Below, one piece after another: positions 2,671 to 38,756 of a DNA stretch of 43,362 bases. The notes beneath the pieces were generated by a model. That model was not told where the DNA came from, ran no database searches, and worked only from the letters and a program-made list of their open reading frames with translations. This DNA comes from Corallochytrium limacisporum Hawaii (Eukaryota; Protista; Pluriformea). The stretch is taken from assembly GCA_002811645.1 (NCBI GenBank), contig PDIP01000005.1:405766-449127 (forward strand), written 5' to 3'. Both the position numbers and the translations under genes were made by a program. Each line of letters begins with the position of its first letter. Position 1 is the stretch's first letter.

Positions 2671-5600
2671 TTACGACGGCAAATGTGGCGAGTTCAACTT
2701 GTCCACATCCGGGCTCGGGGTGCGGCCCATCTTGGCGGCACCATTGAAGAAGCTACCATTGGCATTGGGCGTGCCTTCGAAGAACGAATCCTCCAGTTCG
2801 GACATCTCCCCGGAAGCGGCCGTGTTGCTGCGGCGTGTCCGCGGGCCAGAGATGGATGAATTCCGGCTCAACGACTCCTTGGGAAACACGGATAGTGAAT
2901 TGCGTTGGCTGTCCGTGCCGCTGCCTGTATCGCGCGGTGACGGCAAGAGCGTTTCGTTGTTCTGGGGATCCAGGAGTACCAGCGAATTCCGGCCAGATCT
3001 GTTCGGCGCCACGCGGAACTCCATACTTCGTCTCCAGGATATCCGCCGCAGGTTTTTGACGTCAAGGCCAGACTCATTGTGCACGGTGGAACTGACACTC
3101 TGCAGCAGAGACGGACCCGGACTCGTGGTCGCGGTAGTTCCAACGACAGTGGCCCGTGGACTGTTCGCTGGGGAATTGGCTGCGTGGACCAGTTGTTGTA
3201 ATGCTGCTGCGGCCGCCGCCATCGGGGGCTGCGTCGACGACGCCGGGATCGACCGGCGCCGGCCAGGACCGTGCACACCGCCCGGCGTCGTCGGTGCGTG
3301 GACGTCAGCCATGGTCGCCGGTGACCCTGGTTGCGCGCGTTTACTGGACGGCATGCCGTCTGCACCGGGCGGCTGCATCGCACTGATGAAGTCCGGATAG
3401 CCACTGCCCGCTGCCGCTGCCAGGAAGCTGCCGGCATCCACAAACGGCTGTTTGCCCCGTAGGGTCTCTTCGCGGACCTGTACAACGATGCGCGCAACCG
3501 CCGAGTGGCGATCCATGAGCTCTTCCATCCGCCGGCGGTGGGCGTTGAACATGGACCGGTCACGGGCACCGGAGCCGTCCGAGAGGTGGTTCCAACGGGT
3601 CTGCAAATGTGGCAGAATGGTATCAATCTTGGACTGCTCCTTGATGAGCAGGTCACCCAGCTCCTTGACCTGCGTAGCCAGGGAAGAGACATCGCTCGGG
3701 TCGAGGCGGACGCGTCGGGCTGTGGAGTCAACGTACATTTCCCGCAGGAGCTTGATGGTACTGTCCAGGCGGGCATCAAGGCTTTGGAAGACACGGTGGA
3801 ACACCGGTGCAAATGCAGTGAACGTGATCGAGCGGGTGGCACGGTCCATGGACTCGGAGCTGCCACGCCGGTCGACGGCAGAACTGCTGCCTTCACTGGT
3901 CTCTGCGCTTTCGGCCCCGTGGGCCGACTTGCCGTCCCGCGTGGCCGTGGATTCTTCCTTTTTCTTGCTCTCTGATGACAGATTCAGGCCAGCGACATCG
4001 TCTCGCAGGAGCTTCAACACCTCGTCAAGGTTGGGCAACTCCTCGGGATGGGCTTGCAGCATGCTGCCGGGAGCATTGCTGAATGCACCAGTCGACTGTA
4101 CCGAAGCCTGCGTGGCCAACGTGGTGAGCAATGACGGTCTGTACACACCAAAGATCTTGGCATACTGGCCCAGGGTATCCATCTTCAGTGAGGTCGAGGC
4201 CATTGGGAACGCTTCGAACGGAATGGACCCGGCCAACTGCACACGTTCCCGGACCAATTCAGACAGATCCAGGAGCCGGTACGTGTCACTCGTGCTCATG
4301 AAACGCAGGGCCAGGACGACGGCAGTCCTCAATCGCGGCAAAATACTGAGGAGCTGTTCCTCCTGATTCTGCAGCACGGCCTCGCGATCACCGAATTCGT
4401 GGGCGACCATGTCGTGAAGGGCCTGTTTGCGAGCCTTGAGGTCGGATAGAAGGCGTTCATACACGCTGTCAATTTCCTGCTCTGCCTCCTCGGCAGAGTC
4501 TTTCAATTCCCGCTTGGCCTTGGAGAGCAGCATGAGCAATTCCTCAGCCGCACCAGCACGGTGTGAGGCATTGTCAATGTCGTGGTTGATCTGTTCGGTG
4601 ACGTGACTAACCGCTGTGTCCAGATCCATGCAGCGCATGGTATGCTGGCGGTGCTCTCCATCCAAGAAACACGTCACGCACATCATCACGCCGTGTTCAC
4701 TGCAGTAAATCTCATACGGCTTCCCGTGCATTTGACAGAAACTCACAGTCTCGCCCATTCCCCCCTCCACGCCGCGAAATTCCAACCCTCCCAGGACACC
4801 AGAAGTGCTCATTCCGGCGGAGGATCCAACGCTCTCCGTCAGACTAACGTTACTCTTGAGTGAGACCGACGACAGCCTCTTCTGCGGCTCCTTCTTGTCC
4901 TTTTCAAAGTGGTTGGTGTAGCCACTGCTGGTAGTGTTGTTGTAGTTATTGTTGTTGTTGTTGGTGTTGTTGTTGTTGTTATTGCTGCTGCTGGTGAGAT
5001 TTCCCTTCCGGAGTTTGTGAAGCATCATAGTTTCTCGCAAGGCTGCCGAATCGATGGAAGTCATGCTTACACTTGTCAAGATACCCATGGGCTGCACATT
5101 GTGGGTCTGGAACAGCCGTGCAGCATGGGTTGCAGTCTTACAGTCTGCACACATGCGCGCATCGCAGGTCGTGCAGTACAATACCGCGTCCCGTTCACCA
5201 CAGTTGACACATGGTACCTTTGGCAGAGTGATGGCACTGGTTGCTTCAGTGCTGGGCTTGCGGCCAGCGTCGGAGCCCCCTACCGTGTCCAACAGCACCA
5301 CAGGGCTATCCACACTGCCTTCCAGCCCGTCTAATGAGCGGTGCAGCAAGTGTTTGTTGTTGTTATTCAAACGCCCCAAAATAAGTTCCTCCAGTAGCCA
5401 ATCCTGCCTCACTAGTGTCCTATCGCCGGAGCGCGTGTTCGATCGTACACCGCACATTGGACATTCTACATCCTCGTCGTCCACCAGGCATTGCTCTAAA
5501 TGCTTCAGACACATCGTGTGCGCACAGTCCAGGAGGATGGGCTTCTCCAGTGTCTCGTGGCACATGTCACACTTCATCAGGGTGGCATCGTCCAAGGACG

Positions 5601-6795
5601 TTTCGTGGATGGACGCCCTGCGGTTGGCCAGACGCACTCCAGTGGGAATGGTTATGGCACCACCGCCGCCACCGCCGCCACTGCCGCTCTCATTGGAATG
5701 GGTAGCTTCCACCGCGTCGCGCACATCATCCTGCGAAGAGTACCCGGGGCCAGCACTGGCACCGACAAACGGACCGAGTGCCTCCGCCTCACTGCTCCGA
5801 ATCCGCTGCGGGAATGGTTCGTAGGCGGGGAGCTCGGACCCTGTGGCCGAGTTATTCTGACCAATGTAACTCACATCGCCTGCGCTCTGCACCGAAGTGT
5901 TCCGGATAATTGCATCCCCGGAGCCCACCTTTGGTCCACCGACGTAGCTGCCTCCCAAGGGCCCTCCCACGTTGTTCGCAGACGGAGGGCTGTTGTTGTC
6001 GTTCTGTTTTGATGCTGACGAGCTGGCTCGATTATTTAGGCCAATGTATGACTGACTGGCCTCAGTTTGCCCCGTTGATCCACCTACGGGACGACCCCCG
6101 GGGGTGAAGCGCGGTCTTGTGTTCTCACCGTCCGGGTCCTGCAGGTCTGCAGCGCTCTTTGAGTACGGATGCCCGCGGCGCAGGTCAAAAGGACTCACAC
6201 CGTCCTCGGCCGCTTTCTGTGTGCTCTGCTGGTGCTGCGTGTTGCCGAAAGGACTACCGTTCTGAAAAACATCCTGGCTCTTGTGGCGTTGGTGCGACTG
6301 GATGTTTGTCTTCCGCGGAGGCGGTCCGGCCGATCCGTTGGTGGGCGTCGGTGGCGGCACAGATCCAAAGGAGGGCATGCCCACATAACCTCCGACATCG
6401 GACGATGGTCCTGAGCTGTGCTGGTGTCTACTGTCGGCGAATATTCCATTCTTGCTATCAAAGCCAGCCGCGGAATTGTCGTCGTCCCCTTTCGATCTGA
6501 ACATGGCCCGGCCTGCGGACTTTGACTCGTCCGGATCGGACGCTGTTGTTTTTACGCTGCGCTCACCAACACTGACCCGACGGGCATGGAAGACCTGCTT
6601 CTCCTTATTTTCTTTTTGCGCGATACTGTCACTGCTACCTGACGTGTTTGCGGCCGACTTATGGTCACCGTTGACGGGCAGCCCTTCGTTGGACTGTTCT
6701 CGAGATATTTCCCGAATATTTTCTAATGACTGTCCCGGGGGTTGGTTGAAAAGACGCGAACGTCTCTTCCCCGAGTTCATTCTAAGGAATGGCAT
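2671..6795 (-). CDS. RNF207: RNF207-like RING / B-box / B-box-like / coiled-coil (TRIM-type) E3 ubiquitin ligase, 1374 aa
   Basis: Single ORF. RING CDMC..CAHTMCLKH..CPMC (~5453-5572); B-box CVNC..YCTTCDARMCADCKTATHAARLFQTH (~5096-5212); second B-box-like CQMHGKPY..CVTCF..CMDLDTA (~4615-4740); coiled coil ending ILPRLRTAVVLALRFMS..LLDL. A C-terminal helical block (~3470-3830) resembles the RNF207 C-terminal homologous region. Termini are long and low-complexity. The TRIM-type architecture is firm; the RNF207 orthology is by eye. Confidence 0.8.
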   Translation of the reverse strand: MPFLRMNSGKRRSRLFNQPPGQSLENIREISREQSNEGLPVNGDHKSAANTSGSSDSIAQKENKEKQVFHARRVSVGERSVKTTASDPDESKSAGRAMFRSKGDDDNSAAGFDSKNGIFADSRHQHSSGPSSDVGGYVGMPSFGSVPPPTPTNGSAGPPPRKTNIQSHQRHKSQDVFQNGSPFGNTQHQQSTQKAAEDGVSPFDLRRGHPYSKSAADLQDPDGENTRPRFTPGGRPVGGSTGQTEASQSYIGLNNRASSSASKQNDNNSPPSANNVGGPLGGSYVGGPKVGSGDAIIRNTSVQSAGDVSYIGQNNSATGSELPAYEPFPQRIRSSEAEALGPFVGASAGPGYSSQDDVRDAVEATHSNESGSGGGGGGGAITIPTGVRLANRRASIHETSLDDATLMKCDMCHETLEKPILLDCAHTMCLKHLEQCLVDDEDVECPMCGVRSNTRSGDRTLVRQDWLLEELILGRLNNNNKHLLHRSLDGLEGSVDSPVVLLDTVGGSDAGRKPSTEATSAITLPKVPCVNCGERDAVLYCTTCDARMCADCKTATHAARLFQTHNVQPMGILTSVSMTSIDSAALRETMMLHKLRKGNLTSSSNNNNNNTNNNNNNYNNTTSSGYTNHFEKDKKEPQKRLSSVSLKSNVSLTESVGSSAGMSTSGVLGGLEFRGVEGGMGETVSFCQMHGKPYEIYCSEHGVMMCVTCFLDGEHRQHTMRCMDLDTAVSHVTEQINHDIDNASHRAGAAEELLMLLSKAKRELKDSAEEAEQEIDSVYERLLSDLKARKQALHDMVAHEFGDREAVLQNQEEQLLSILPRLRTAVVLALRFMSTSDTYRLLDLSELVRERVQLAGSIPFEAFPMASTSLKMDTLGQYAKIFGVYRPSLLTTLATQASVQSTGAFSNAPGSMLQAHPEELPNLDEVLKLLRDDVAGLNLSSESKKKEESTATRDGKSAHGAESAETSEGSSSAVDRRGSSESMDRATRSITFTAFAPVFHRVFQSLDARLDSTIKLLREMYVDSTARRVRLDPSDVSSLATQVKELGDLLIKEQSKIDTILPHLQTRWNHLSDGSGARDRSMFNAHRRRMEELMDRHSAVARIVVQVREETLRGKQPFVDAGSFLAAAAGSGYPDFISAMQPPGADGMPSSKRAQPGSPATMADVHAPTTPGGVHGPGRRRSIPASSTQPPMAAAAAALQQLVHAANSPANSPRATVVGTTATTSPGPSLLQSVSSTVHNESGLDVKNLRRISWRRSMEFRVAPNRSGRNSLVLLDPQNNETLLPSPRDTGSGTDSQRNSLSVFPKESLSRNSSISGPRTRRSNTAASGEMSELEDSFFEGTPNANGSFFNGAAKMGRTPSPDVDKLNSPHLPS
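4935..4982. repeat. Imperfect (GTT)n trinucleotide tract encoding poly-Asn in the RNF207-like CDS
   Basis: gtgttgttgtagttattgttgttgttgttggtgttgttgttgttgtta; protein NNNNNNTNNNNNNYNN. Confidence 0.9.
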
Positions 6796-18358: not shown

Positions 18359-21085
18359 ATGGGTAAGAAGGTTAAGACAGGAAAGGCCCGTAGGGACAAG
18401 TACTATCACTTGGCCAAGGAACAAGGATTTCGTGCTCGTTCAGCCTTCAAACTGATCCAGCTTAACAAGAAATTTGGCTTCCTGGAGGATATTGGGGGCA
18501 GAAAACCGAGCATTGCCATTGATCTTTGTGCGGCCCCGGGTGGTTGGATGCAAGTATGTGCAAGGCAAATGCCCGCCAAGTCTCTCATTGTGGGTGTGGA
18601 TCTTGATCCGATCAAACCCATTCCAGGCGCCATTGGGTTCCAGGGAGATATTACCACAGAAAAATGCCGCAAAGACTTGCAAGGGTACTTGAAGAATAGT
18701 AAGGCTGATGTAGTATTGCACGACGGTGCCCCCAATGTTGGTACCGCCTGGAACCAGGACGCATACGACCAGGCAGATCTGACGCTTAAGGCCTTGGCGC
18801 TGGCGGTTGAATTCTTGCGTAAGGGAGGTACATTCGTGACCAAGGTTTTCCGCTCAAAGGATTATAATAGTCTGCTATGGGTTTTCAAGAATCTTTTCCG
18901 CAAAGTGCACGGTACCAAGCCGTCCAGTAGTCGTAATGTGTCGGCCGAGATTTTTGTTGTCTGCGAGGATTTCATTGCGCCCGATAAGATCGATCCCCGA
19001 ATGTTAGATAGCCGTTCCGTCTTCGAAGACATCAGCGCGCTGAAACCAGCAAAAAATGTAATGCAACAGGAGGAGAAGTCGCATGGCAAAAAGCCCCAAG
19101 CTCAAGGTTACAGTGACAACCTGCCCATTTCCGGTTTCCTGGGCACTCCCGTATCTGTCTTTGTGAACAGCGCGGATCCCATTGGTATCCTCGGCGAATA
19201 CAATGCCTTCACCTGGGATAATGACGTGGAGAGTAAACTGTTTGCAAAGCACAATGCCACCACATCGGAAGTCCGGGCGCTCACGGAAGATTTGAAAGTT
19301 CTGGGTAAGAAGGACTTCAAGACGCTTCTAAAGTGGCGGGACGCGATGCGCGTGTTCATGTCGTCGGTCAATGATGAAGACGGTGAAGATTCAGACAATG
19401 ATGATAGGAAGACCTCTGCCCCGAATGGCCATGCTGTTGATGACAATGGTGAGGAGGACCAAGATGATGATGAGATGGATTTGGACGACGACAACGTCGT
19501 GGACCAGGTGCTTGAGGAAGCGGAGGCAGAGCTTGCCCGTAAGGAAAAGGCCAAACGCCGCAAGGAGTACAAGGCTCGCCTGAAACGCGAGGAACGCGAA
19601 GCGCTGAAGATGGGAGTCCATGAGGATCTAACCTACGAAGAGAACGGCCCGGATGAGGCGCTCTTCAGCAGCAGTGCCATCGAAGCGGCGCAGCGCAAAG
19701 CAGAACGGGAGGGCAAGAAGCAGACCTATGGAGAGCAGCAGAAGGCGAAACGTCTGCTGAAAAGTGCATACGAGGCCGCTGCAGACGGTCAGCTGGGCAA
19801 TGAGAGCGACGAAGGTGGTGCTCTCATCGACGACGAAGAAAAACAACCGGTGGAGGACGAACCGTATGTTTTTGACAGCGACAATCCAGACTCCGCCCGT
19901 GCGGAGTACGAGGACGACATGGAGCAACAGCTGGAGGAAATGTATAATCAGTACGCGGAGAGGCGCCGTGGCAAACAGGTGGCCCTGGTTGCCGAAGCCC
20001 GCCGGCAGGAAGAAGAAAAGCGCAACAAACTCATCAACATCATAAAAGGCAAGAAAGATCGCAAGGGAACCGATCCTCTGTTGGAAGGTATGTTGCTGGA
20101 CGACGATCTGGCTGATGCTGTCGACGGTGGCAACGAGGACGCAGAAATTCTGAAGATGGCTCAGAAATTTGGCTTTGTGCAGAAAGGTGACTTGCGTGCC
20201 ACCGGTGTCGAGGACACCAGTGAAATGCCGATGACCAATGGTGATGCCAAAAAGGGTAAGATTAACGTTGGGTCGAAGCAGAATGGCGGAGGGTACGACT
20301 CTGATGACACCGACTCCTCCGACGACGAGGACAGCGCTGATGAAGACAGTGACAACGATTCAGAGGACGCCATGGAAATGGCTGCCCGCGGTCTGAATGT
20401 TAACGGCGAGAACAATGGTGCGAAGGATAGTAAAATTACCGATGACGCTGAGTTTGAGGAAGTAAAGTACGAAGATCCCGAGGCTGCGAACCGCAGCTAT
20501 GTGGTCGACGCCGGCTCCTTCGCCATGGGGAAGAAGCTGGCTCAGCGAAAGAAAAAGGACGACGTTATCGACGAATACTTCAACCGCTACGCCTTTGCGG
20601 ACGATCCGGATGCACTTCCCAACTGGTTCGTGGACGATGAGAACAAGCACAACAAGCCTCAAATCCCTGTGACCAAGGAGGAAATGCAGGAATACCGCCG
20701 TCGCATGCGTGAACTGGACGCCCGACCCATCAAGAAAATTGCGGAAGCTAAGGCGCGCAAGAAAATGAAAAACGCGCGCAAGCTCGCCCGCGCTCAGAAG
20801 CGCGCACAGGCCATCACTGACTCAAAGGATATGAGCGAGGGTGAGAAGGCCAAGCGCATCGAGAGCTTGTATAAGACGGCAATGAAAGCGTCCAAGAAGG
20901 AGAAGCCTGAGGTCAAGCTTGTGGTTGCCAAGCGTGGTCTAAAGGGCCGTGGTGCACCTGGCAAGCGCAAAGGAGTCAAGATCAAAATGGTAGACAAGCG
21001 TATGAAGAAGGAATCGAGAGCCATGAAGCGGATCGAGAAACGCGGATCATCCAAGAAGCCGAAAGCGGGCAGTCGAAAGCGTTAG
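18359..21085 (+). CDS. SPB1: Pre-rRNA 2'-O-ribose methyltransferase Spb1/FTSJ3, 908 aa
   Basis: N-terminus MGKK..GKARRDKYYHLAKEQGFRARSAFKL; SAM motif DLCAAPGGW; VLHDGAPNVG; FVTKVFRSKDY; SSRNVSAEIFVVC. Spb1_C region FNRYAF..LPNWFVDDENKHNKP..ARPIKKIAEAKARKK. Confidence 0.97.
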   Translation: MGKKVKTGKARRDKYYHLAKEQGFRARSAFKLIQLNKKFGFLEDIGGRKPSIAIDLCAAPGGWMQVCARQMPAKSLIVGVDLDPIKPIPGAIGFQGDITTEKCRKDLQGYLKNSKADVVLHDGAPNVGTAWNQDAYDQADLTLKALALAVEFLRKGGTFVTKVFRSKDYNSLLWVFKNLFRKVHGTKPSSSRNVSAEIFVVCEDFIAPDKIDPRMLDSRSVFEDISALKPAKNVMQQEEKSHGKKPQAQGYSDNLPISGFLGTPVSVFVNSADPIGILGEYNAFTWDNDVESKLFAKHNATTSEVRALTEDLKVLGKKDFKTLLKWRDAMRVFMSSVNDEDGEDSDNDDRKTSAPNGHAVDDNGEEDQDDDEMDLDDDNVVDQVLEEAEAELARKEKAKRRKEYKARLKREEREALKMGVHEDLTYEENGPDEALFSSSAIEAAQRKAEREGKKQTYGEQQKAKRLLKSAYEAAADGQLGNESDEGGALIDDEEKQPVEDEPYVFDSDNPDSARAEYEDDMEQQLEEMYNQYAERRRGKQVALVAEARRQEEEKRNKLINIIKGKKDRKGTDPLLEGMLLDDDLADAVDGGNEDAEILKMAQKFGFVQKGDLRATGVEDTSEMPMTNGDAKKGKINVGSKQNGGGYDSDDTDSSDDEDSADEDSDNDSEDAMEMAARGLNVNGENNGAKDSKITDDAEFEEVKYEDPEAANRSYVVDAGSFAMGKKLAQRKKKDDVIDEYFNRYAFADDPDALPNWFVDDENKHNKPQIPVTKEEMQEYRRRMRELDARPIKKIAEAKARKKMKNARKLARAQKRAQAITDSKDMSEGEKAKRIESLYKTAMKASKKEKPEVKLVVAKRGLKGRGAPGKRKGVKIKMVDKRMKKESRAMKRIEKRGSSKKPKAGSRKR

Positions 21086-30817: not shown

Positions 30818-32778
30818 TTTGGTACGGAGGTGACATGCCGAGCAAACGTGCCAACGAAAATGGCGTGTGGCGACGACTGTGTCGAATGCTCCCGGCTGTA
30901 GCAGTCAATGGTAGAGCAACTTCTCACTATATAAAATGTACTAGAAATTTATCAATCTAAGATAGCACCAGCCTTAAATCAATCACCAGAGGGAGGACAC
31001 AGTTTTCCATGGAACCGACCTAATGAAACAGAGGTTGCCCCCTTCCCCGCCTCCTTAGGTTTCCTTACGAAAAGCATGGCGTGAACCTTCACGGGCGACT
31101 GCTCTGGGGTTTTTGTGCACCGGAATTCACCCACCACCACACTCAAAAACTCAGCTTTTTGAAACCAGAACCCCCCCCCCGGGGGGGAGGACCCCGGGGA
31201 GGGGAGAGGAAGGAGGCGGAGGAGGACCTCGTCGAGGTCCGGACATCTCCCCTTCTCTTTTTTCGTTTGGCCCAGGGGAAGTAAGCCCCAATCCGCCCCC
31301 CCCTTCCCTCTCCTCTCCCTTTCCTTCGCGATAGGCAGGGAGACGGTTCTTAGTCGAGCCGACGCCGGAAATCGGGCAAGAAATGAAAGTTTACCGCGGG
31401 AAATGGGAAAAACCTACGGGAGCGAACATGTGGAGTGCACATGCCATCCAAATGGGTTGTTGCTTGTTTGGTGCCATCCGAGTCGGGTAGGTCTGTCCGA
31501 GTGAAGGGGAAAAGGGGAAACTGGCGAACTCTTTTCTAAAACAAAATGGACTGCAACCGAAGGAAGAGTAAGGGGAAGGCCTGGGTTGTGGAACCATTGG
31601 CGGTGGAACAAGGTTTAGGATTTCACAGGACCGATGGACGTTGAAGATATCAGCAAGCCCTGATCTCTGAAGGCAGAAGAAAGATCCTTCCCTTCCCTTT
31701 CCCTCCCAAACCAAATCCCCACCCCTCGACCCCGGTGGTGAGGGGGCCGGGGAGACTTCATATTTTCGATTCCCACTCTATCTTGCGTTGGCAGCGGCAC
31801 CCCGCAAAAACACAGACAGAGTCTAAATAAAACGGAGGTTGGCGATGGGCGCGAGTGACAAGAAAGTCCGAGAACTGAGCAAGGTACACGCCGAAGAGAA
31901 TTGGGTGTTTAATACTTAATGTATGGACTATTTCTGGGGATATGTGAATTCTTTGGCTCCCCGATTTCCTTACCGCGCTACATTGTCTTGCTTCCTGTGC
32001 CGAAACGAGAACCGGGCTGTCGCACTGCTGCGGGGTGGCGATGTTTATCATTGCGTGTCTTTTGCTAACTTTTTAGAGGGGGAAAACTATAGGCGCTGGT
32101 GAAAGTGAGACCGGTGTGCAGAGCCCCGCAGGCGGTGGGGAAGTGCTGCTGGTGGACAATCAGGCAGGCCTGCGTCACCGTCGTCCGTCTCTCTCAGACT
32201 CTCGCTGTCTTCGGGATTACGCACCACTCTTCTCACACTCGCATGCGCGCACGGGAAAACAGATAGGCACGGTTTCATCGGTTGATGTGCTGAAACTTCT
32301 CTCCGTTAGATTTTCATGAACGCAATAGATAGATTGTCAAGAACACTGGGAGGCGCAGTCCCGTTCAACTATGTGATCAATGATTCGCTGTGTGTCAACG
32401 AGTTATTTGAAGGTCACAATCTAAATACGTATGGGGGAATGGGAGCCTAGTGTATGATTGTCTCCACAGGACTGTTCAAGAAGACAAGGGTTGTTGACAA
32501 ACTTTAACAGTGCGCGCACTTATTTTGGCAGACACACCGTGGTCGAGGAGAGCGTATAGAATTGTCCTGTCCACCTGACGTGCGGGAAAATGTACCAGCC
32601 ATATTGTACACAGAGAGAGAAAGAGTAAGACATAGTGCAAGGAAAGATGAAAGGACATGGCGTAATTACGGAATACGGTAAAGAAAAGGAGTTCTGATAA
32701 AACGTCGTGAAGTAAAGAAAGAGGTGCTCAAGTGGGTTAAGGATGTGACATCCCAGCCTCAGGAGATACAAACTGAAA

Positions 32779-35700
32779 ATGAAAATGGAAAACTATCTGG
32801 CAGAAGGTTTGCCCCAGATGGTGGCTGCATTCTGCAGTGATACATCGCTGCAGCACACTGTGACCAGAAGTGAAATTGATAGCGCAAAGGGGCAGCCCGC
32901 GCTCACGGCACTAACAGCAAGTTTGTTTGGGTGTACCGAGTACGAGGTGCTGTGGCAGTTTGGTGAATTCTGGGTGGAGAATATGTATCGCGGACCCATT
33001 CGCCACGGCGTCAAGGAACTACCCAAACGGCGAGTACAGTCTCTGGCTACTGCATTGACCGTGCTTCTGCATGTACATTCGTCAATTCATGAACGACGTG
33101 GAGACTCCGGTCAGTTTTCTTTGCCCACCTTGGAAGTATCGCGCACTTCAGCCGTATCCACGGCGGGGGAACACAGTCTGGAGCTAGTGGTGCGTGAGAT
33201 TGATGCGGAGATGCTGCCATTTATGGAGGGCATTGTACGTGGTACTGCCCGATTGGTTGGCTACGATACCGACCATGTCACGGTCGACACTGTGCCCAAC
33301 GCTGAAGAAACCGACAGTTTCATCATGACAGTGTTACTGGTGAAGGGTGACGACGAGGATACTGTACCCCACATGAGCGTCCGAGAAAGTCTGCCTCCGA
33401 TTGCACTCGATCAGAACTTCGTTGATCGGGTGTTTCCGTTCCATTTCATTCTTGGAAGCAACCTGGAAATTGTGCAGATTGGAAGCTTCCTCCACAACGT
33501 ATGCCAACACATCAAGGTCGGTGACGACTTCCGGAAGCATCTGTGGCTGAAAAGCCCCCAAATTGACTCTGCTTCATTAGGCCTCGATGTCTTTGAAATT
33601 CACAAGAACCGCACCTTCGTGTTTGAGGTCATGGGCATCGTGTTGTCGGGACAAATAACACTGATTCAGAACGGGACACTTGCTCTGTTCATGGGCAGTC
33701 CGGACCCTGATAGCCTGAGGGATTATATGAGGCTACGGCATACATACCGTGTGAACAACGGAATATACGACGCAGCAATAACAGGTGGTGACAACGCCGA
33801 GGAGAGCGGCGGTGAAGAGCGGGGATCTGACTCGAGCACTCTATACAGACTCGAAAACATGAGCTTCTTCAGGATGCCCCCCTTGAGCCGGAAACCTATA
33901 CTTCATCAGGCCACTGCGGTGGAGCCCAAGCATGGGTCAATAGCTACAGAGACTAGCGCCACTGCCAAACCGTATTCACAGGCCACCCGGAGCACCGCCA
34001 TGGCCGCTGCGGTACCTAAATTCAATGGCAAGCGCCATGTGCATGACGATGAAGGTACGGATACCGAGAGTGCGGAGTCTGTGGTTGATTCTGACTCCCC
34101 GATATCCATGCTACCCACTGCTACGGAACTGTCCAATTGCCAGGACATTGTAGACGAGGCGATGGCGTTGTGCAACAACCAACAGGGATCACCCATCACC
34201 ATAACCCGCACCAGCTCCGATTCTGCTGCCAAGCAATTGGAAACTGCGGATGACGACAAACCTAGGAATCCGATTCCTCTGACCAACTACAGCAACTCCA
34301 CTGTGGACCTGCGGCCACCGATCCAGAAAATACGAGATCGCCTGTCAGCCATTGCAACTGAAGTGGAGGACGAGAGGATCCGAGCACAGTTGGATATTGT
34401 CATGGCTGAACTCACGCATAATGACGATGTGTACCTGCCCATCCTGCAAGTACAGCGAGCCAAGGATGGCAAGTCCCTTACTGTCAGCTCCGCCACTCCC
34501 GAAGGTCTGGTGCCATCACAGCCCTCCTTCGACAATGGCACACAGGGTAATGTCGCCGATGTTGGGGAGCTGAATGAGTACATGAAGTCGTTCTTCCCAC
34601 CCACCCTTCCCGACAGTGCAACTGTGGAGGGTGCTAGGGAGGGACGCCGAGAGTCGGTGGTCAGCCTGGGCGTCACTTCAGTGACATCTGGCCATTCTGA
34701 TGACGAAATGGAAGAGTTCAACGGAAAGCGGCTATGGAGTAAAGCTCCCGTCGAGCGCAGTGATAGTCTGGGTCTGTCCCAGTCCAATGGTGCTGGTACC
34801 GAGACGGATACCATTGAAGTTGCAAGCCCCGTGACTGTGAGTAGCAGCAGCCCAGTGGGTTCCTCTCTCTCTTTACCCCAGCATTCTGGGTTCCTGACTA
34901 TCCTGACCCCAGAGCATAAGGAGGAGGGCGCTCAGATCGTGTATAGCCCGGTGTGGACTCAATATTTCTGCACAATGACCGCAGATTCCACCCTGCACAT
35001 CTACGTATCCGAAGGAGGTGGAGATGAGGGCGTTTCAGAAGTTGCCGCTTTCGGGGAGAACGAAGATGAGGAACGCTACGGGAAGCTAACCGATATCAAG
35101 ATGAAGCAATTTTCTCTTCAGCGCCTGGCCATCAAAGATGGTGTCTTCTGTATTGAAATGGTCAATACTAACAGTCCGGAGGGCACTGGCTCCCTGTTTC
35201 TGGCTGCCCGCAAACCCAATCGGACTCTCCGCTGGTACCGGGTCATAGGTCGTATCTGTAGTGCCCTATCCGGTGGACGTCACAAGTGTGTGCGCCAGCC
35301 AGTGCCGCGTATGCTGGGTGCCGATCTGTCCAAGGTATTTGTTCCGACCTCAATGGCCCGCATCGAAGGGCGCCGCAGTCCGTTTGCCCGCTGTCGGCGT
35401 ACTACTGACAATGTGGCTAATGTATCCCTACACTTTAGCACAATGTTGCTGGAAGAGCGCCGTGAGCGTGGGCTGAGCACTACGGAAGACGGTGAGGATG
35501 GAGAAATTGAGGACGGCATGGTTGAGTCGGAAGGCAGCGATAAGAACTGTGCACAAGATGTCATGCGTGCCTCCGATATCAATCGGCTGGACTTTGACCT
35601 TTGGACTCTTAGTGAAGTGCTCTGCCAATATCCGTTACAGTACCTGACCATGCAGTGCATACAGGCCTACGACTTGTGCAACAAGTTGAAGATCAACGAG

Positions 35701-35949
35701 CGCAGCATGCTGAACTTTCTGTTTGTGATCGAGAGCGGATACCGCGCTTCCAATCCTTACCACAATTCGATTCACGCAGCCGACGTGGTACAGACCATGT
35801 TCTACTTCCTGCGTACCCTCAAACTGGACCAGCACTTCAACGACGAGGATATACTTGCCTCCCTACTGGCTGCTGCCGTGCACGACTATGGCCACCCCGG
35901 TGTGAACAACGCATACCTCGTAGCTTTTGAGGATGACCTGGCGCTGTGC

Positions 35950-35981
<32 letters not shown>

Positions 35982-36594
35982 CGTGTCCAAGGCCCTCACC
36001 ATCTTGAAGCAGCCCGATTGTGATGTTTTTGCAAACTTTAGCGAGCAGCAATTCAAGCGCATTCGCCTGCTCATGATTGAGATGATCTTGAACACGGATA
36101 TGGCCTATCATTTCGAGCTCATGGGCAAGTTCAGCGGAGTCAGTACCACTCTGAGTGAACCTAACCTACCCGCCAAAGACCACCAGGCGTCACTGCGTCT
36201 GATCATGTCCATGGCATTGCATTGTGCTGACGTATCTAATCCGGCCAAACCGGAGTCCCTGTACGTGGAATGGGCGTACCGTGTCATGGAAGAGTTTTTC
36301 CGCCAGGGTGAGAGCGAGCTTGCCAATGGCCTGCCCATCTCTCCGTTCTATGAGCGTGCCACCAAGAACATTCCCAAATGCCAGACTGGTTTCATCAATT
36401 TCATTGTCAAACCACTCTTTGAGCTCTTTGCCAAGTTCCTTCCGGGACTTCACGATGAGTGTTTGCCGAATCTGGAGGACAGCCTGCAGATGTGGGCCCG
36501 TAAGGAATTGCCGGAGGCCAAGTGGTACCGCGGCATGGTGGCCCACGACACACGTGAGAAGGACGAGGCCGCAGTAAATGAGGAAAGCGCCTAA
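32779..36594 (+). CDS. Class I 3',5'-cyclic nucleotide phosphodiesterase fused to N-terminal H-NOX-like + H-NOBA(PAS) domains and a PH-like domain, 1271 aa
   Basis: PDE motifs YHNSIHAADV, HDYGHPGVNN, YNDKSVLENMH, LNTDMAYH, HCADVSNPAK, MEEFFRQG and KCQTGFINFIV (~35570-36510). H-NOBA motifs VFPFHFILGSNLEIVQIG..LSGQI..LFMGSP (~33400-33740). H-NOX-like aa 3-187. PH-like SGFLTI..WTQYFCTM..TLHIY..LFLAA..RWYRVI (~34885-35262). The true start may be Met3 (32785). Confidence 0.93.
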
Positions 36595-37164
36595 TGCGCG
36601 GCCTCTGGCGTAGTAGGTATGTCTGGAGAACCACTTCACGAAGGAAAGTGGCTCAGCAATGTCAAGGTGAGCCACTGGTGCAATGGTTGTCACAAGCAGA
36701 CACACAACAAAACACACCACCAGTCGAAAACGCAGTCAAATATCGCTTTGACAAGTAATCTTCAATTAGATGTCTCTATACATGTTTATGTACTGTACCG
36801 GTTCGCCTCTTCTGGAGGAGTGCTTTGGCAACCTTCGGTCGCGCCGCACAAATTGCGCCACTCTCCCCGCTCATGTGTCTTCGCCTTGACACTGTCACCG
36901 TACCCCGGCCCCCCCCCCACCCCGGGGGGCCGGGAGGGGACAGGGGGGCCTCCCGCAACAGCCGGCTCCAGATGGTTCTGCAGTCTGTGTGGCATGCGTT
37001 TGGGCCACTAAGCTCGGTGGGTAAAGGTGGTATTAACAACAGGTGTGTGTGTGGCTGTGCATGACGAAGAGTACATTAGATCGGGATGAAACAAAACGAT
37101 TGAGGACAACCGGGCAACGAAATAGTAGTACAATCGTTAAAGCCTACAATAAAGAATTTATGTT

Positions 37165-37683
37165 ATGGTAGAGAACAGAGTGAAAGCAGCCGCTGATGCC
37201 TACCGTCAGGAGGTCAGCCAAAGCATCCGCGACTATGAGGTCTTCATTGAAGAGAAACTCAAACCAGAACTACAACAAATGTACGAACTTCGAGATACTG
37301 TGTATGCTAAAATTACACAGCATTTGAACCTGCGCAGGGATGTGCAGAGAATCAGAAATCTACGCAAGGACCACGGGCAGAAGGACCTGCGCACACGGAT
37401 ACCCCTCGAGGCCGCAGATTTCATGGTGAATGCGTATATACCGGATACTGAATATATCTATATAAAGGTGGGCTACGGTTTCCATGTCCAGTTCAGTCTC
37501 GACGAGGCTGAGGTGTACATCACAAGAAAAATAGAGCACCTGGAATCCCAAGCGGACGAAATTACCAAGGATCTCGCCAAGGTCAAGGCCAATATTCGGG
37601 TGATGCTGGGGCACCTGGACGATTTGATGACGCAGGCCCAGGTCACCGGTGTTGGAAGTGCAAATGCTCCAGTGCCATCATGA
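37165..37683 (+). CDS. UXT: Prefoldin alpha-like protein UXT, 172 aa
   Basis: Coiled coil-beta hairpin-coiled coil layout. YEVFIEEKLKPEL..RDTVY and FMVNAYIPDTEYIYIKVGYGFHVQFSLDEA..KVKANIRVML match the UXT pattern. Confidence 0.9.
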   Translation: MVENRVKAAADAYRQEVSQSIRDYEVFIEEKLKPELQQMYELRDTVYAKITQHLNLRRDVQRIRNLRKDHGQKDLRTRIPLEAADFMVNAYIPDTEYIYIKVGYGFHVQFSLDEAEVYITRKIEHLESQADEITKDLAKVKANIRVMLGHLDDLMTQAQVTGVGSANAPVPS

Positions 37684-37799: not shown

Positions 37800-38756
37800 T
37801 TATCTATCGGTTTCTTTCTTCTTTTCTGTTCGACTACCATCGAAACAAGAAATAACGCGCACACTAAAGCGTGTAAACCAATTAGGTTTCTTTCTCTGAG
37901 CCCGAGACTTCCGATTGCCTCTACCGTTCGCCCCTGAACCAATGACCCCACTGCCACCAGCATATTCCTCGTAGAATATCTGATACGCAAGCTGACGTTG
38001 GTATTCTTCTGCTCTAAAGAGGTCGGCATGGTCTGTGAGATCGATGGTGATCAAACCTGCCTCGAACTCTTCGAAGCGATGCTGCGCTGGGCACTCCGGG
38101 AAGGCACCCTGGACGACGAAAACTGTGCATTTATCTATCTCCATCTGTCGCAAGTACATCTCCATGTACGTCCTCTGCATGGGCACCGGATGCCATTCGC
38201 GTGAGTCTAACCGAAACCATTGATGTCCGAAGCGACGCAGAGAGAGCCAGTGATGCCCACAATGCACGATATACCCCATGGCAGATGACGGACTCACACG
38301 GGTTGTGAGCTGAGCTGTTGATTTGATCGGAATCATTTCCAGACTAAAGATACTCAGTGCCTTCTGTAATACCTGTGAACTGAAATTGCCACCGTCATCG
38401 AAATTTCTTGCGAAAGAACGGGAAGGAAGATGCTTTCTCTTTCGCCTTCTTCTGCGTTTCGTTTCCTCACTATCCGATCCTGCTTCCTCATTATCTAACT
38501 TCGCTTTCCCAGCATCTGACTTCGCTTTCCCATCATCTGACTTCGCTTTCCCATCATTTGATCTTGTTTTCTCAGTGCGCCGAGGCCCGTCTAGTAGGGC
38601 CTCCTCTGCCCGATCCAACTCCTCCGCGATTGTTGCAAGCTCGAAGGCTGTAAAGTAGTCCAATTGTAGCAGATTATTGAGACAATGCTGGGCACAGAGC
38701 CCTCCCTTTTGCCTTTCATGGTATACAAACGTTGAGTAGTGGATAGGCCCAGCCAT
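37800..38756 (-). CDS. ATXN3: Ataxin-3-like Josephin-domain deubiquitinase, 318 aa
   Basis: VYHERQKGGLCAQHCLNNLLQ (catalytic Cys21), NFDDGGNFSSQVLQKAL, HHWLSLRRFGHQWFRLDS (catalytic His and Asp), VFVVQGAFPEC. Confidence 0.9.
   Translation of the reverse strand: MAGPIHYSTFVYHERQKGGLCAQHCLNNLLQLDYFTAFELATIAEELDRAEEALLDGPRRTEKTRSNDGKAKSDDGKAKSDAGKAKLDNEEAGSDSEETKRRRRRKRKHLPSRSFARNFDDGGNFSSQVLQKALSIFSLEMIPIKSTAQLTTRVSPSSAMGYIVHCGHHWLSLRRFGHQWFRLDSREWHPVPMQRTYMEMYLRQMEIDKCTVFVVQGAFPECPAQHRFEEFEAGLITIDLTDHADLFRAEEYQRQLAYQIFYEEYAGGSGVIGSGANGRGNRKSRAQRKKPNWFTRFSVRVISCFDGSRTEKKKETDR
38498..38560. repeat. 21-bp coding tandem repeat x3 inside the Josephin gene
   Basis: acttcgctttcccagcatctg / acttcgctttcccatcatctg / acttcgctttcccatcatttg, encoding 7-aa units SNDGKAK-SDDGKAK-SDAGKAK on the minus strand. 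Confidence 0.95.

What the first reader, a model, noticed from the sequence alone, without database searches (positions are those of the whole stretch)
32779..36594. Soluble-guanylate-cyclase sensor module (H-NOX + H-NOBA/PAS) wired to a phosphodiesterase instead of a cyclase
Seen: one uninterrupted ORF with H-NOX-like aa 3-187 (EVLWQFGEFW, LLHVH, LPTLEV, FMEGIVRGTAR), an H-NOBA PAS domain (FPFHFIL..IVQIG..LSGQI..LFMGSP), a linker, a PH-like domain and a complete class I PDE catalytic domain. Established: in eukaryotes the H-NOX + H-NOBA pair is the hallmark N-terminus of NO-activated soluble guanylate cyclase, which makes cGMP, and none of the 11 mammalian PDE families carries it. Sensor-PDE fusions do exist in unicellular holozoans (choanoflagellate rhodopsin-PDE). 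Inference: this is a sign-inverted version of sGC signalling, in which a gas/heme/redox input, or PAS-mediated pairing with an sGC subunit, controls cyclic-nucleotide destruction. I do not know of a characterised protein with this architecture but cannot verify novelty.
Basis: partly seen in the sequence, partly recalled or inferred. Interest (0 to 1): 0.92.

Follow-up and report, generated by a model that had tools for sequence, protein, structure and literature searches.

The report
H-NOX–PAS–PH cAMP phosphodiesterase family
Single-celled relatives of animals share an old, apparently undescribed enzyme that joins the sensor half of the animal nitric-oxide receptor to a cAMP-destroying enzyme; whether the sensor still binds heme or a gas is open and easy to test.

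Summary
The gene is real: one intronless ORF (1271 aa), covered end to end by single contigs from two probable RNA runs, and under purifying selection between strains. The genome is probably Corallochytrium limacisporum.

All four domains are confirmed (H-NOX, HNOBA-type PAS, PH, class I PDE). The same architecture occurs in Amoebidium, Ichthyophonus, Creolimax, Chromosphaera and the filasterean Pigoraptor. Their catalytic domains form one clade (100/99), so this is an old holozoan PDE family. I found no description of it in the held literature.

The 'sign-inverted sGC' reading is only partly supported:
- The active site carries the cAMP signature, not cGMP.
- The sGC coiled-coil transducer is missing.
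- No NOS and no sGC partner were found in the genome.
- The H-NOX keeps the proximal His, Pro, Trp and Gly hinge in 6/6 orthologs but has lost YxSxR in 6/6.

Best reading: a cAMP PDE whose degenerate H-NOX pocket binds a His-ligated ligand, most likely loosely held heme (about 45%). A ligand-free pseudo-H-NOX is the main rival. Scan notes on this came only from this window.

The parts
32440..36790 (+). Probable transcript extent (about 340 nt 5' leader, intronless CDS, 80-200 nt 3' end); strand taken from the ORF, not from reads
   Evidence: contigs of two probable RNA runs, 32465-36790 and 32440-36674; no coverage upstream of 32440
32779..36594 (+). ORF, 1271 aa (1269 aa from the likely start Met3 at 32785)
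   Evidence: strain differences 15 synonymous / 6 nonsynonymous, pN/pS 0.12
32785..33348 (+). Degenerate beta-type H-NOX domain (aa 3-190), no N-terminal extension
33076..33078 (+). His100 = sGC beta1 His105 (proximal heme ligand), invariant in 6/6; with Gly62, Trp65, Pro116 and Gly151 (beta1 G71, F74, P118, G148)
33190..33204 (+). Position of the YxSxR propionate clamp, here V138/E140/D142: lost
33394..33714 (+). HNOBA-type PAS domain (aa 206-312); no coiled coil follows
   Evidence: HNOBA model matched only up to position 141 of 216 or less in all six members
34300..34446 (+). Conserved two-helix element (aa 508-556) ending in DVYxP, shared with membrane-anchored PDEs of amoebozoa, Pigoraptor and a zoosporic fungus (Paraphysoderma)
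   Evidence: no Pfam or PDB hit
34558..34599 (+). Short conserved helix ELxxYMxxFF (aa 594-607)
34645..34656 (+). PKA-type site RRES (aa 623-626); [RK]RxS sites are enriched across the family's linkers
   Evidence: 18 observed, 3.3 expected
34873..35277 (+). Divergent PH domain (aa 699-833)
35566..36513 (+). Class I PDE catalytic domain (aa 930-1245): metal ligands H999, H1035, D1036, D1151; catalytic H995; invariant Q1202; cAMP signature N1154/Y994/D1002/P1155 and Y1162

Best explanation
A soluble, probably dimeric, cAMP-preferring class I phosphodiesterase of a family that dates back to an early holozoan ancestor. It arose once, when an sGC-type H-NOX-PAS module (without its coiled coil) and a PH domain were joined to a PDE that carries a two-helix regulatory element. 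SHOWN: architecture, family, intact active site, expression, purifying selection. INFERRED from motifs: cAMP preference (about 0.8), PAS-mediated dimerisation, PH-mediated membrane targeting, PKA feedback through linker RRxS sites. INFERRED and untested: the H-NOX pocket still holds a His100-ligated ligand, most likely heme b held loosely because the propionate clamp is gone. That would make it a sensor of heme availability or redox state, possibly of NO/CO but not O2. Occupancy would change activity by docking of the module on the helix pair or catalytic dimer, not through an sGC-type coiled-coil lever.
For: Six orthologs share the domain order, and their catalytic domains form a clade at 100/99. 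Only 6 of 144 ungapped H-NOX columns are invariant at 24% mean identity, and five of them are the functional H-NOX residues G71, F/W74, H105, P118 and G148 (roles of the His and Gly hinge in PMC8196705). The domain starts at the H-NOX Met1 register in the window protein and in 4 orthologs, so it lacks the alpha-type extension that blocks the pocket (PMC8196705). No distal Tyr at the beta1-145 position. The cAMP 'asparagine region' is complete. [RK]RxS sites: 18 observed, 3.3 expected. The genome encodes ferrochelatase and a PKA regulatory subunit-like protein.
Against: YxSxR is lost in 6/6, and the Arg becomes Asp/Glu in 4/6, which would repel a propionate. Moth sGC alpha lacks YxSxR and does not bind heme (PMC8196705). 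The window protein's alphaB-alphaC region is shortened and poorly modelled (pLDDT under 50 at aa 19-37). No domain-domain contact was shown. The shuffle test for PKA sites ignores local composition.
Confidence: 0.45

Rival explanations
1. Pseudo-H-NOX: the module binds no cofactor and serves for dimerisation, scaffolding or autoinhibition, like the sGC alpha H-NOX; regulation comes from PKA sites and the PH domain.
For: YxSxR lost in all six, with charge reversal in four; precedent in sGC alpha (PMC8196705); no coiled-coil transducer; H-NOX identity among orthologs only 17-34%.
Against: A buried polar His, the Trp and the Pro stay invariant across three lineages while nearly everything else changes; no pocket-blocking N-terminal extension.
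Confidence: 0.33
2. The pocket binds a non-heme ligand (another tetrapyrrole, a lipid or small aromatic, or a metal ion through His100).
For: His kept while the propionate clamp is lost. The model also matches V4R/TRAPP-type ligand-binding folds at lower Z (PoxR 8.1, DmpR 8.0), so the fold can take other ligands.
Against: No conserved new polar ligand set was seen; the invariant residues are exactly the heme-related ones.
Confidence: 0.1
3. One reading: a canonical NO/CO/O2-gated enzyme that destroys cGMP, the mirror image of sGC.
For: The module is closest to sGC beta1. The genome has two rhodopsin-cyclase fusions, receptor-type cyclases and a PKG-like kinase.
Against: cAMP-type pocket; no YxSxR, no coiled coil, no NOS found; no distal Tyr for O2.
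Confidence: 0.08
4. The PAS domain pairs with an sGC subunit and couples cyclase and PDE.
For: HNOBA PAS domains dimerise in sGC and in the Nostoc kinase (title of 2p04).
Against: No second H-NOX or HNOBA-PAS in the genome; the cyclases examined have other N-termini. The assembly is only about 83% BUSCO-complete if it is Corallochytrium (PMC5560861).
Confidence: 0.03
5. Assembly or annotation artefact.
For: None found.
Confidence: 0.01

Closest known systems
Soluble guanylate cyclase beta1 (H-NOX-PAS-coiled coil-cyclase)
   Same: H-NOX followed by HNOBA PAS, colinear over beta1 1-331 (E 9e-28); His105, Pro118 and Gly hinge kept; no N-terminal extension.
   Different: No YxSxR, no coiled coil, no cyclase; the output is a PDE; PH domain added; no partner subunit or NOS found in the genome.
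sGC alpha pseudo-H-NOX
   Same: Degenerate heme motifs; moth alpha also lacks YxSxR (PMC8196705).
   Different: Alpha has an N-terminal extension that fills the pocket, and human alpha lacks the His; this family has no extension and keeps the His.
cAMP-specific class I PDEs (PDE4, PDE7, PDE8) and the membrane-anchored helix-pair PDEs of amoebozoa, Pigoraptor and zoosporic fungi
   Same: Best PDB hits are PDE4D (E 2e-69); cAMP signature; two-helix element shared with the membrane PDEs. A likeness of that element to PDE8 is from my memory and was not confirmed by a tool.
   Different: Forms its own clade, apart from PDE4, PDE1 and the membrane PDEs; no UCR1/2 Pfam hit, no REC, no transmembrane helices; H-NOX-PAS and PH are not found in mammalian PDEs (own knowledge).
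Choanoflagellate rhodopsin-PDE
   Same: Sensor fused directly to a class I PDE in a unicellular holozoan (bioRxiv 10.1101/2022.02.14.480389).
   Different: Membrane light sensor described as acting on cGMP; unrelated sensor fold.
Bacterial H-NOX / heme-PAS control of c-di-GMP enzymes; HNOBA-GGDEF-EAL fusions
   Same: Heme-gas modules acting on cyclic-dinucleotide turnover (PMC8196705 section 4.1 for H-NOX with diguanylate cyclases; HNOBA-GGDEF-EAL protein P0003).
   Different: EAL enzymes, not class I PDE; c-di-GMP; H-NOX usually a separate protein.

Membership tests
Class I cyclic nucleotide PDE | PDEase_I domain with metal-binding His/Asp set, invariant Gln and P-clamp Phe | tested here: met
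Class I cyclic nucleotide PDE | Hydrolyses cAMP and/or cGMP | not testable with these tools
   needs an enzyme assay
cAMP-specific PDEs | Asn/Tyr/Asp/Pro 'asparagine region' (PMC5617230 S4 Fig) | tested here: met
   N1154, Y994, D1002, P1155; kept in all orthologs where sequenced
PDE4 | Groups with PDE4 in the catalytic-domain tree; UCR domain | tested here: not met
PDE8 | REC + PAS + PDE8-type N-terminal element | tested here: inconclusive
   no REC or PDE8A_N hit; no PDE8 sequence was in the tree; helix-pair likeness not confirmed
H-NOX domain (fold) | Helical distal subdomain plus four-stranded proximal sheet; homology to HNOB | tested here: met
   (two orthologs over the Pfam HNOB cut-off)
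Heme-binding H-NOX | Proximal His on alphaF, conserved Pro, glycine hinge | tested here: met
   H100, P116, G62, G151 invariant in 6/6
Heme-binding H-NOX | YxSxR propionate-binding motif | tested here: not met
   V138/E140/D142; absent in 6/6, Tyr alone kept in two
Heme-binding H-NOX | Binds heme b and NO/CO | not testable with these tools
   needs spectroscopy
O2-binding H-NOX | Distal Tyr at the beta1-145 position | tested here: not met
   F/M/V/M/V/I in the six
Soluble guanylate cyclase | Coiled coil and class III cyclase after the PAS domain | tested here: not met
PH domain | Seven-strand sandwich plus C-terminal helix with Trp | tested here: met
   weak by sequence alone

The most novel reading that the evidence does not exclude
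A eukaryotic class I phosphodiesterase directly gated by heme and NO/CO through an H-NOX that binds heme without YxSxR. It would route gas or heme signals into cAMP, have been present in early holozoans, and have been lost in choanoflagellates and animals, which kept the sGC wiring instead.
Probability: 0.25. Interest if true: 0.9.

Novelty: new variant of a known kind. Interest (0 to 1): 0.7.

Why it matters
It adds an apparently undescribed PDE family to the toolkit of the unicellular ancestors of animals. It shows that the sGC sensor module was reused on other outputs in eukaryotes (PDE here, RasGAP in an amoebozoan), and that at least one holozoan seems to keep the module without sGC or NOS. 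It makes two questions directly testable: can an H-NOX bind heme and signal without YxSxR, and can it signal without the coiled coil? If ligand-gated, it would be a single-chain heme/gas-controlled cAMP eraser, of interest for the evolution of NO signalling and as a tool.

Tried and rejected
Word-indexed homolog searches with the N-terminal module found only the query; orthologs came from the exhaustive search and from a search on the C-terminal half.

PAS-only trees are unresolved: the window PAS falls among bacterial PAS domains without support, and family monophyly is not rejected (p-AU 0.28). The donor of the module (sGC or bacterial) cannot be named.

The weak own-genome HNOB hit is FANCD2. 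The second HNOBA hit is the helix before a receptor cyclase.

The helix pair has no Pfam, PDB or PDE4-UCR match. Metagenome scans gave no relative with the module. ESM Atlas gave only sub-threshold HNOB leads and no cluster with this architecture. NCBIfam was blank.

Ten literature searches found no description; the original HNOB/HNOBA paper was not held. Absence from Capsaspora, Sphaeroforma, choanoflagellates and animals is not shown: one search scored 8000 candidates and listed 120.

Full report
**Observation.** The ORF at 32779-36594 (+) encodes 1271 aa. Pfam finds PDEase_I at aa 994-1226 (E 2.5e-84) and the PAS part of HNOBA at aa 210-264 (E 1.4e-8), but neither HNOB nor PH. Against solved structures, aa 1-330 hit the Nostoc kinase PAS and human sGC alpha1, and the catalytic domain hits PDE4D best.

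**Source.** The genome is 24,109,830 bases in 286 contigs with long intronless ORFs. This fits Corallochytrium limacisporum (24.1 Mb, PMC5560861). The identification is an inference.

**Reality of the gene.** Two probable RNA runs each give one contig over the whole ORF (32465-36790 and 32440-36674). They show no joints or indels and no coverage upstream of 32440. A DNA run, possibly the assembly's source, spans the region in one piece. One RNA run looks like a second strain: its 21 coding differences are 15 synonymous and 6 nonsynonymous, pN/pS 0.12, p 3e-6.

**A family.** The exhaustive search with aa 1-330 returned an Amoebidium parasiticum protein with HNOBA, PH and PDEase_I. Searching with its C-terminal half returned four more: Ichthyophonus hoferi (gene model run together with an ABC transporter), Creolimax fragrantissima, Chromosphaera perkinsii, and Pigoraptor chileana (C-terminally partial). 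The last two pass the Pfam HNOB cut-off (E 1.9e-12 and 8.6e-8), and all five pass PH.

On the catalytic domain alone the six form a clade at 100/99, apart from PDE4, PDE1 and a membrane-anchored PDE group. PDE8 and PDE9 were not in the tree, and the window protein is a long branch. The species cover Corallochytrea, both ichthyosporean orders and Filasterea (groups as in PMC8061703 and PMC5560861). One fusion in an early holozoan is therefore the simplest reading. Loss in choanoflagellates and animals is suggested by the searches but not shown.

**H-NOX.** A profile of the five orthologs scores the window protein at 37 bits, against at most 5.2 for shuffles. The six-member profile aligns to human sGC beta1 1-331 at E 9e-28. 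The AF2 model from these six rows (mean pLDDT 65) matches Nostoc H-NOX at Z 14.3 (rmsd 3.6, 169 aligned) and the Nostoc PAS at Z 15.9 (rmsd 1.7, 99 aligned).

Of 144 ungapped columns only L58, G62, W65, H100, P116 and G151 are invariant. The last five map to beta1 G71, F74, H105, P118 and G148, and a canonical bacterial H-NOX has the same five. The YxSxR positions read V138/E140/D142 here. The motif is absent in all six, and the Arg is acidic in four. There is no distal Tyr, so O2 binding is unlikely (criterion in bioRxiv 10.1101/2022.02.14.480389).

The domain begins at the H-NOX Met1 register, unlike sGC alpha, whose extension fills the pocket. But moth alpha shows that loss of YxSxR goes with a non-heme domain (PMC8196705). 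The N-terminus itself contacts the heme propionates in sGC (PMC3212528), so its kept register is mild support for an occupied pocket. Heme binding is therefore open.

**Between sensor and enzyme.** The HNOBA model is matched only in its PAS part in all six. What follows is a 95-207 aa, Pro-containing, disorder-type linker, so the coiled coil whose straightening activates sGC (PMC8196705) is missing. A conserved two-helix element (aa 508-556) and a short helix (aa 594-607) follow. The two-helix element is shared with membrane-anchored PDEs, where by my reading of the sequences it sits just after a predicted coiled coil. It is thus a plausible regulatory input point (inference).

The PH domain is divergent here but folds as PH (Z 12.6, rmsd 2.3, 100 aligned). 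[RK]RxS sites are enriched in the regulatory regions (18 against 3.3 expected). Four of six orthologs have one at the H-NOX/PAS junction.

**Catalytic domain.** All metal ligands, Q1202 and F1205 are present, as is the Asn/Tyr/Asp/Pro set reported only for cAMP-specific PDEs (PMC5617230 S4 Fig), plus the PDE4-like Y1162.

**Genome context.** No NO synthase was found, and no second H-NOX or HNOBA-PAS. Six PDE genes with long open frames were found. The cyclases examined include two rhodopsin fusions and two receptor types but no sGC. Ferrochelatase, a PKA-R-like protein and a PKG-like kinase are present. The assembly is incomplete (83% BUSCO if Corallochytrium), so absences are provisional. The neighbours (a prefoldin-family gene, Josephin, Spb1) are unrelated.

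**Mechanism.** Shown: an intact, expressed, conserved H-NOX-PAS-helix pair-PH-PDE. Inferred: cAMP hydrolysis (0.8), dimerisation through PAS, membrane targeting through PH, and PKA feedback. Most likely for the sensor (0.45): a His100-ligated, loosely held heme reporting heme availability, redox state or NO/CO by direct docking.

**Novelty.** Each domain is known, and sensor-PDE fusions are a known kind. This combination and family were not found in ten full-text searches of the held library, which lacks most subscription journals. I rate it a new variant of a known kind, interest 0.7, and 0.9 if ligand gating is shown.

**Earlier scan notes.** The notes near this place are from this same window. 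I had reached the His/YxSxR reading and spotted the helix pair before reading them. The cAMP, PH and PKA-site points were tested here afterwards. The scan had not recorded this architecture on other DNA (that look-up covers this genome only).

Noticed in passing
P0019; L067:1-7052: Balamuthia mandrillaris has two tandem genes with HNOB + HNOBA + RasGAP; P0032 adds an N-terminal hemerythrin to an HNOB + HNOBA protein with a RasGAP-looking tail (no Pfam hit for that tail). A second eukaryotic rewiring of the sGC sensor module; P0019 keeps the proximal His.
   Followed up: partly
L033:2939-4477 and L039:3056-4948 (G000 C57, C173): Two microbial rhodopsin-nucleotidyl cyclase fusions in this genome (513 and 631 aa).
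   Followed up: partly
L032:2147-3496 (G000 C43): A 450-aa class I PDE with a hydrophobic N-terminus (signal-peptide-like), sister to the L029 PDE in the tree; also noted by the scan as s1-576886.
   Followed up: partly
L028:2895-5243 (G000 C17): PDE with a weak response-regulator receiver hit (RegA/PDE8-type architecture).
   Followed up: no
P0049, P0051-P0059, P0065: A membrane-anchored PDE group (hydrophobic helices, coiled coil, helix pair, PDE) in amoebozoa, Pigoraptor and Paraphysoderma; the N-terminal part has no Pfam hit in the members scanned.
   Followed up: partly
P0045: The Ichthyophonus gene model joins the ortholog to an ABC transporter that starts with a mitochondrial-type leader; probably two genes merged by the annotation.
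   Followed up: no
L037:2987-7219 (G000 C184): Fungal-type adenylate cyclase (RA, LRR, PP2C, cyclase) in this holozoan genome; L040 is a Cache-domain cyclase and L034 a cNMP-binding double cyclase.
   Followed up: no
window 32440-32778: The 5' leader of about 340 nt holds several upstream ATGs; six strain differences lie in it.
   Followed up: no
window 37165-37683, 37800-38756, 18359-21085, 2671-6795: Neighbours: prefoldin-family subunit, Josephin, Spb1 methyltransferase, RING/B-box protein; seven N-gaps in the window, none in the gene.
   Followed up: no
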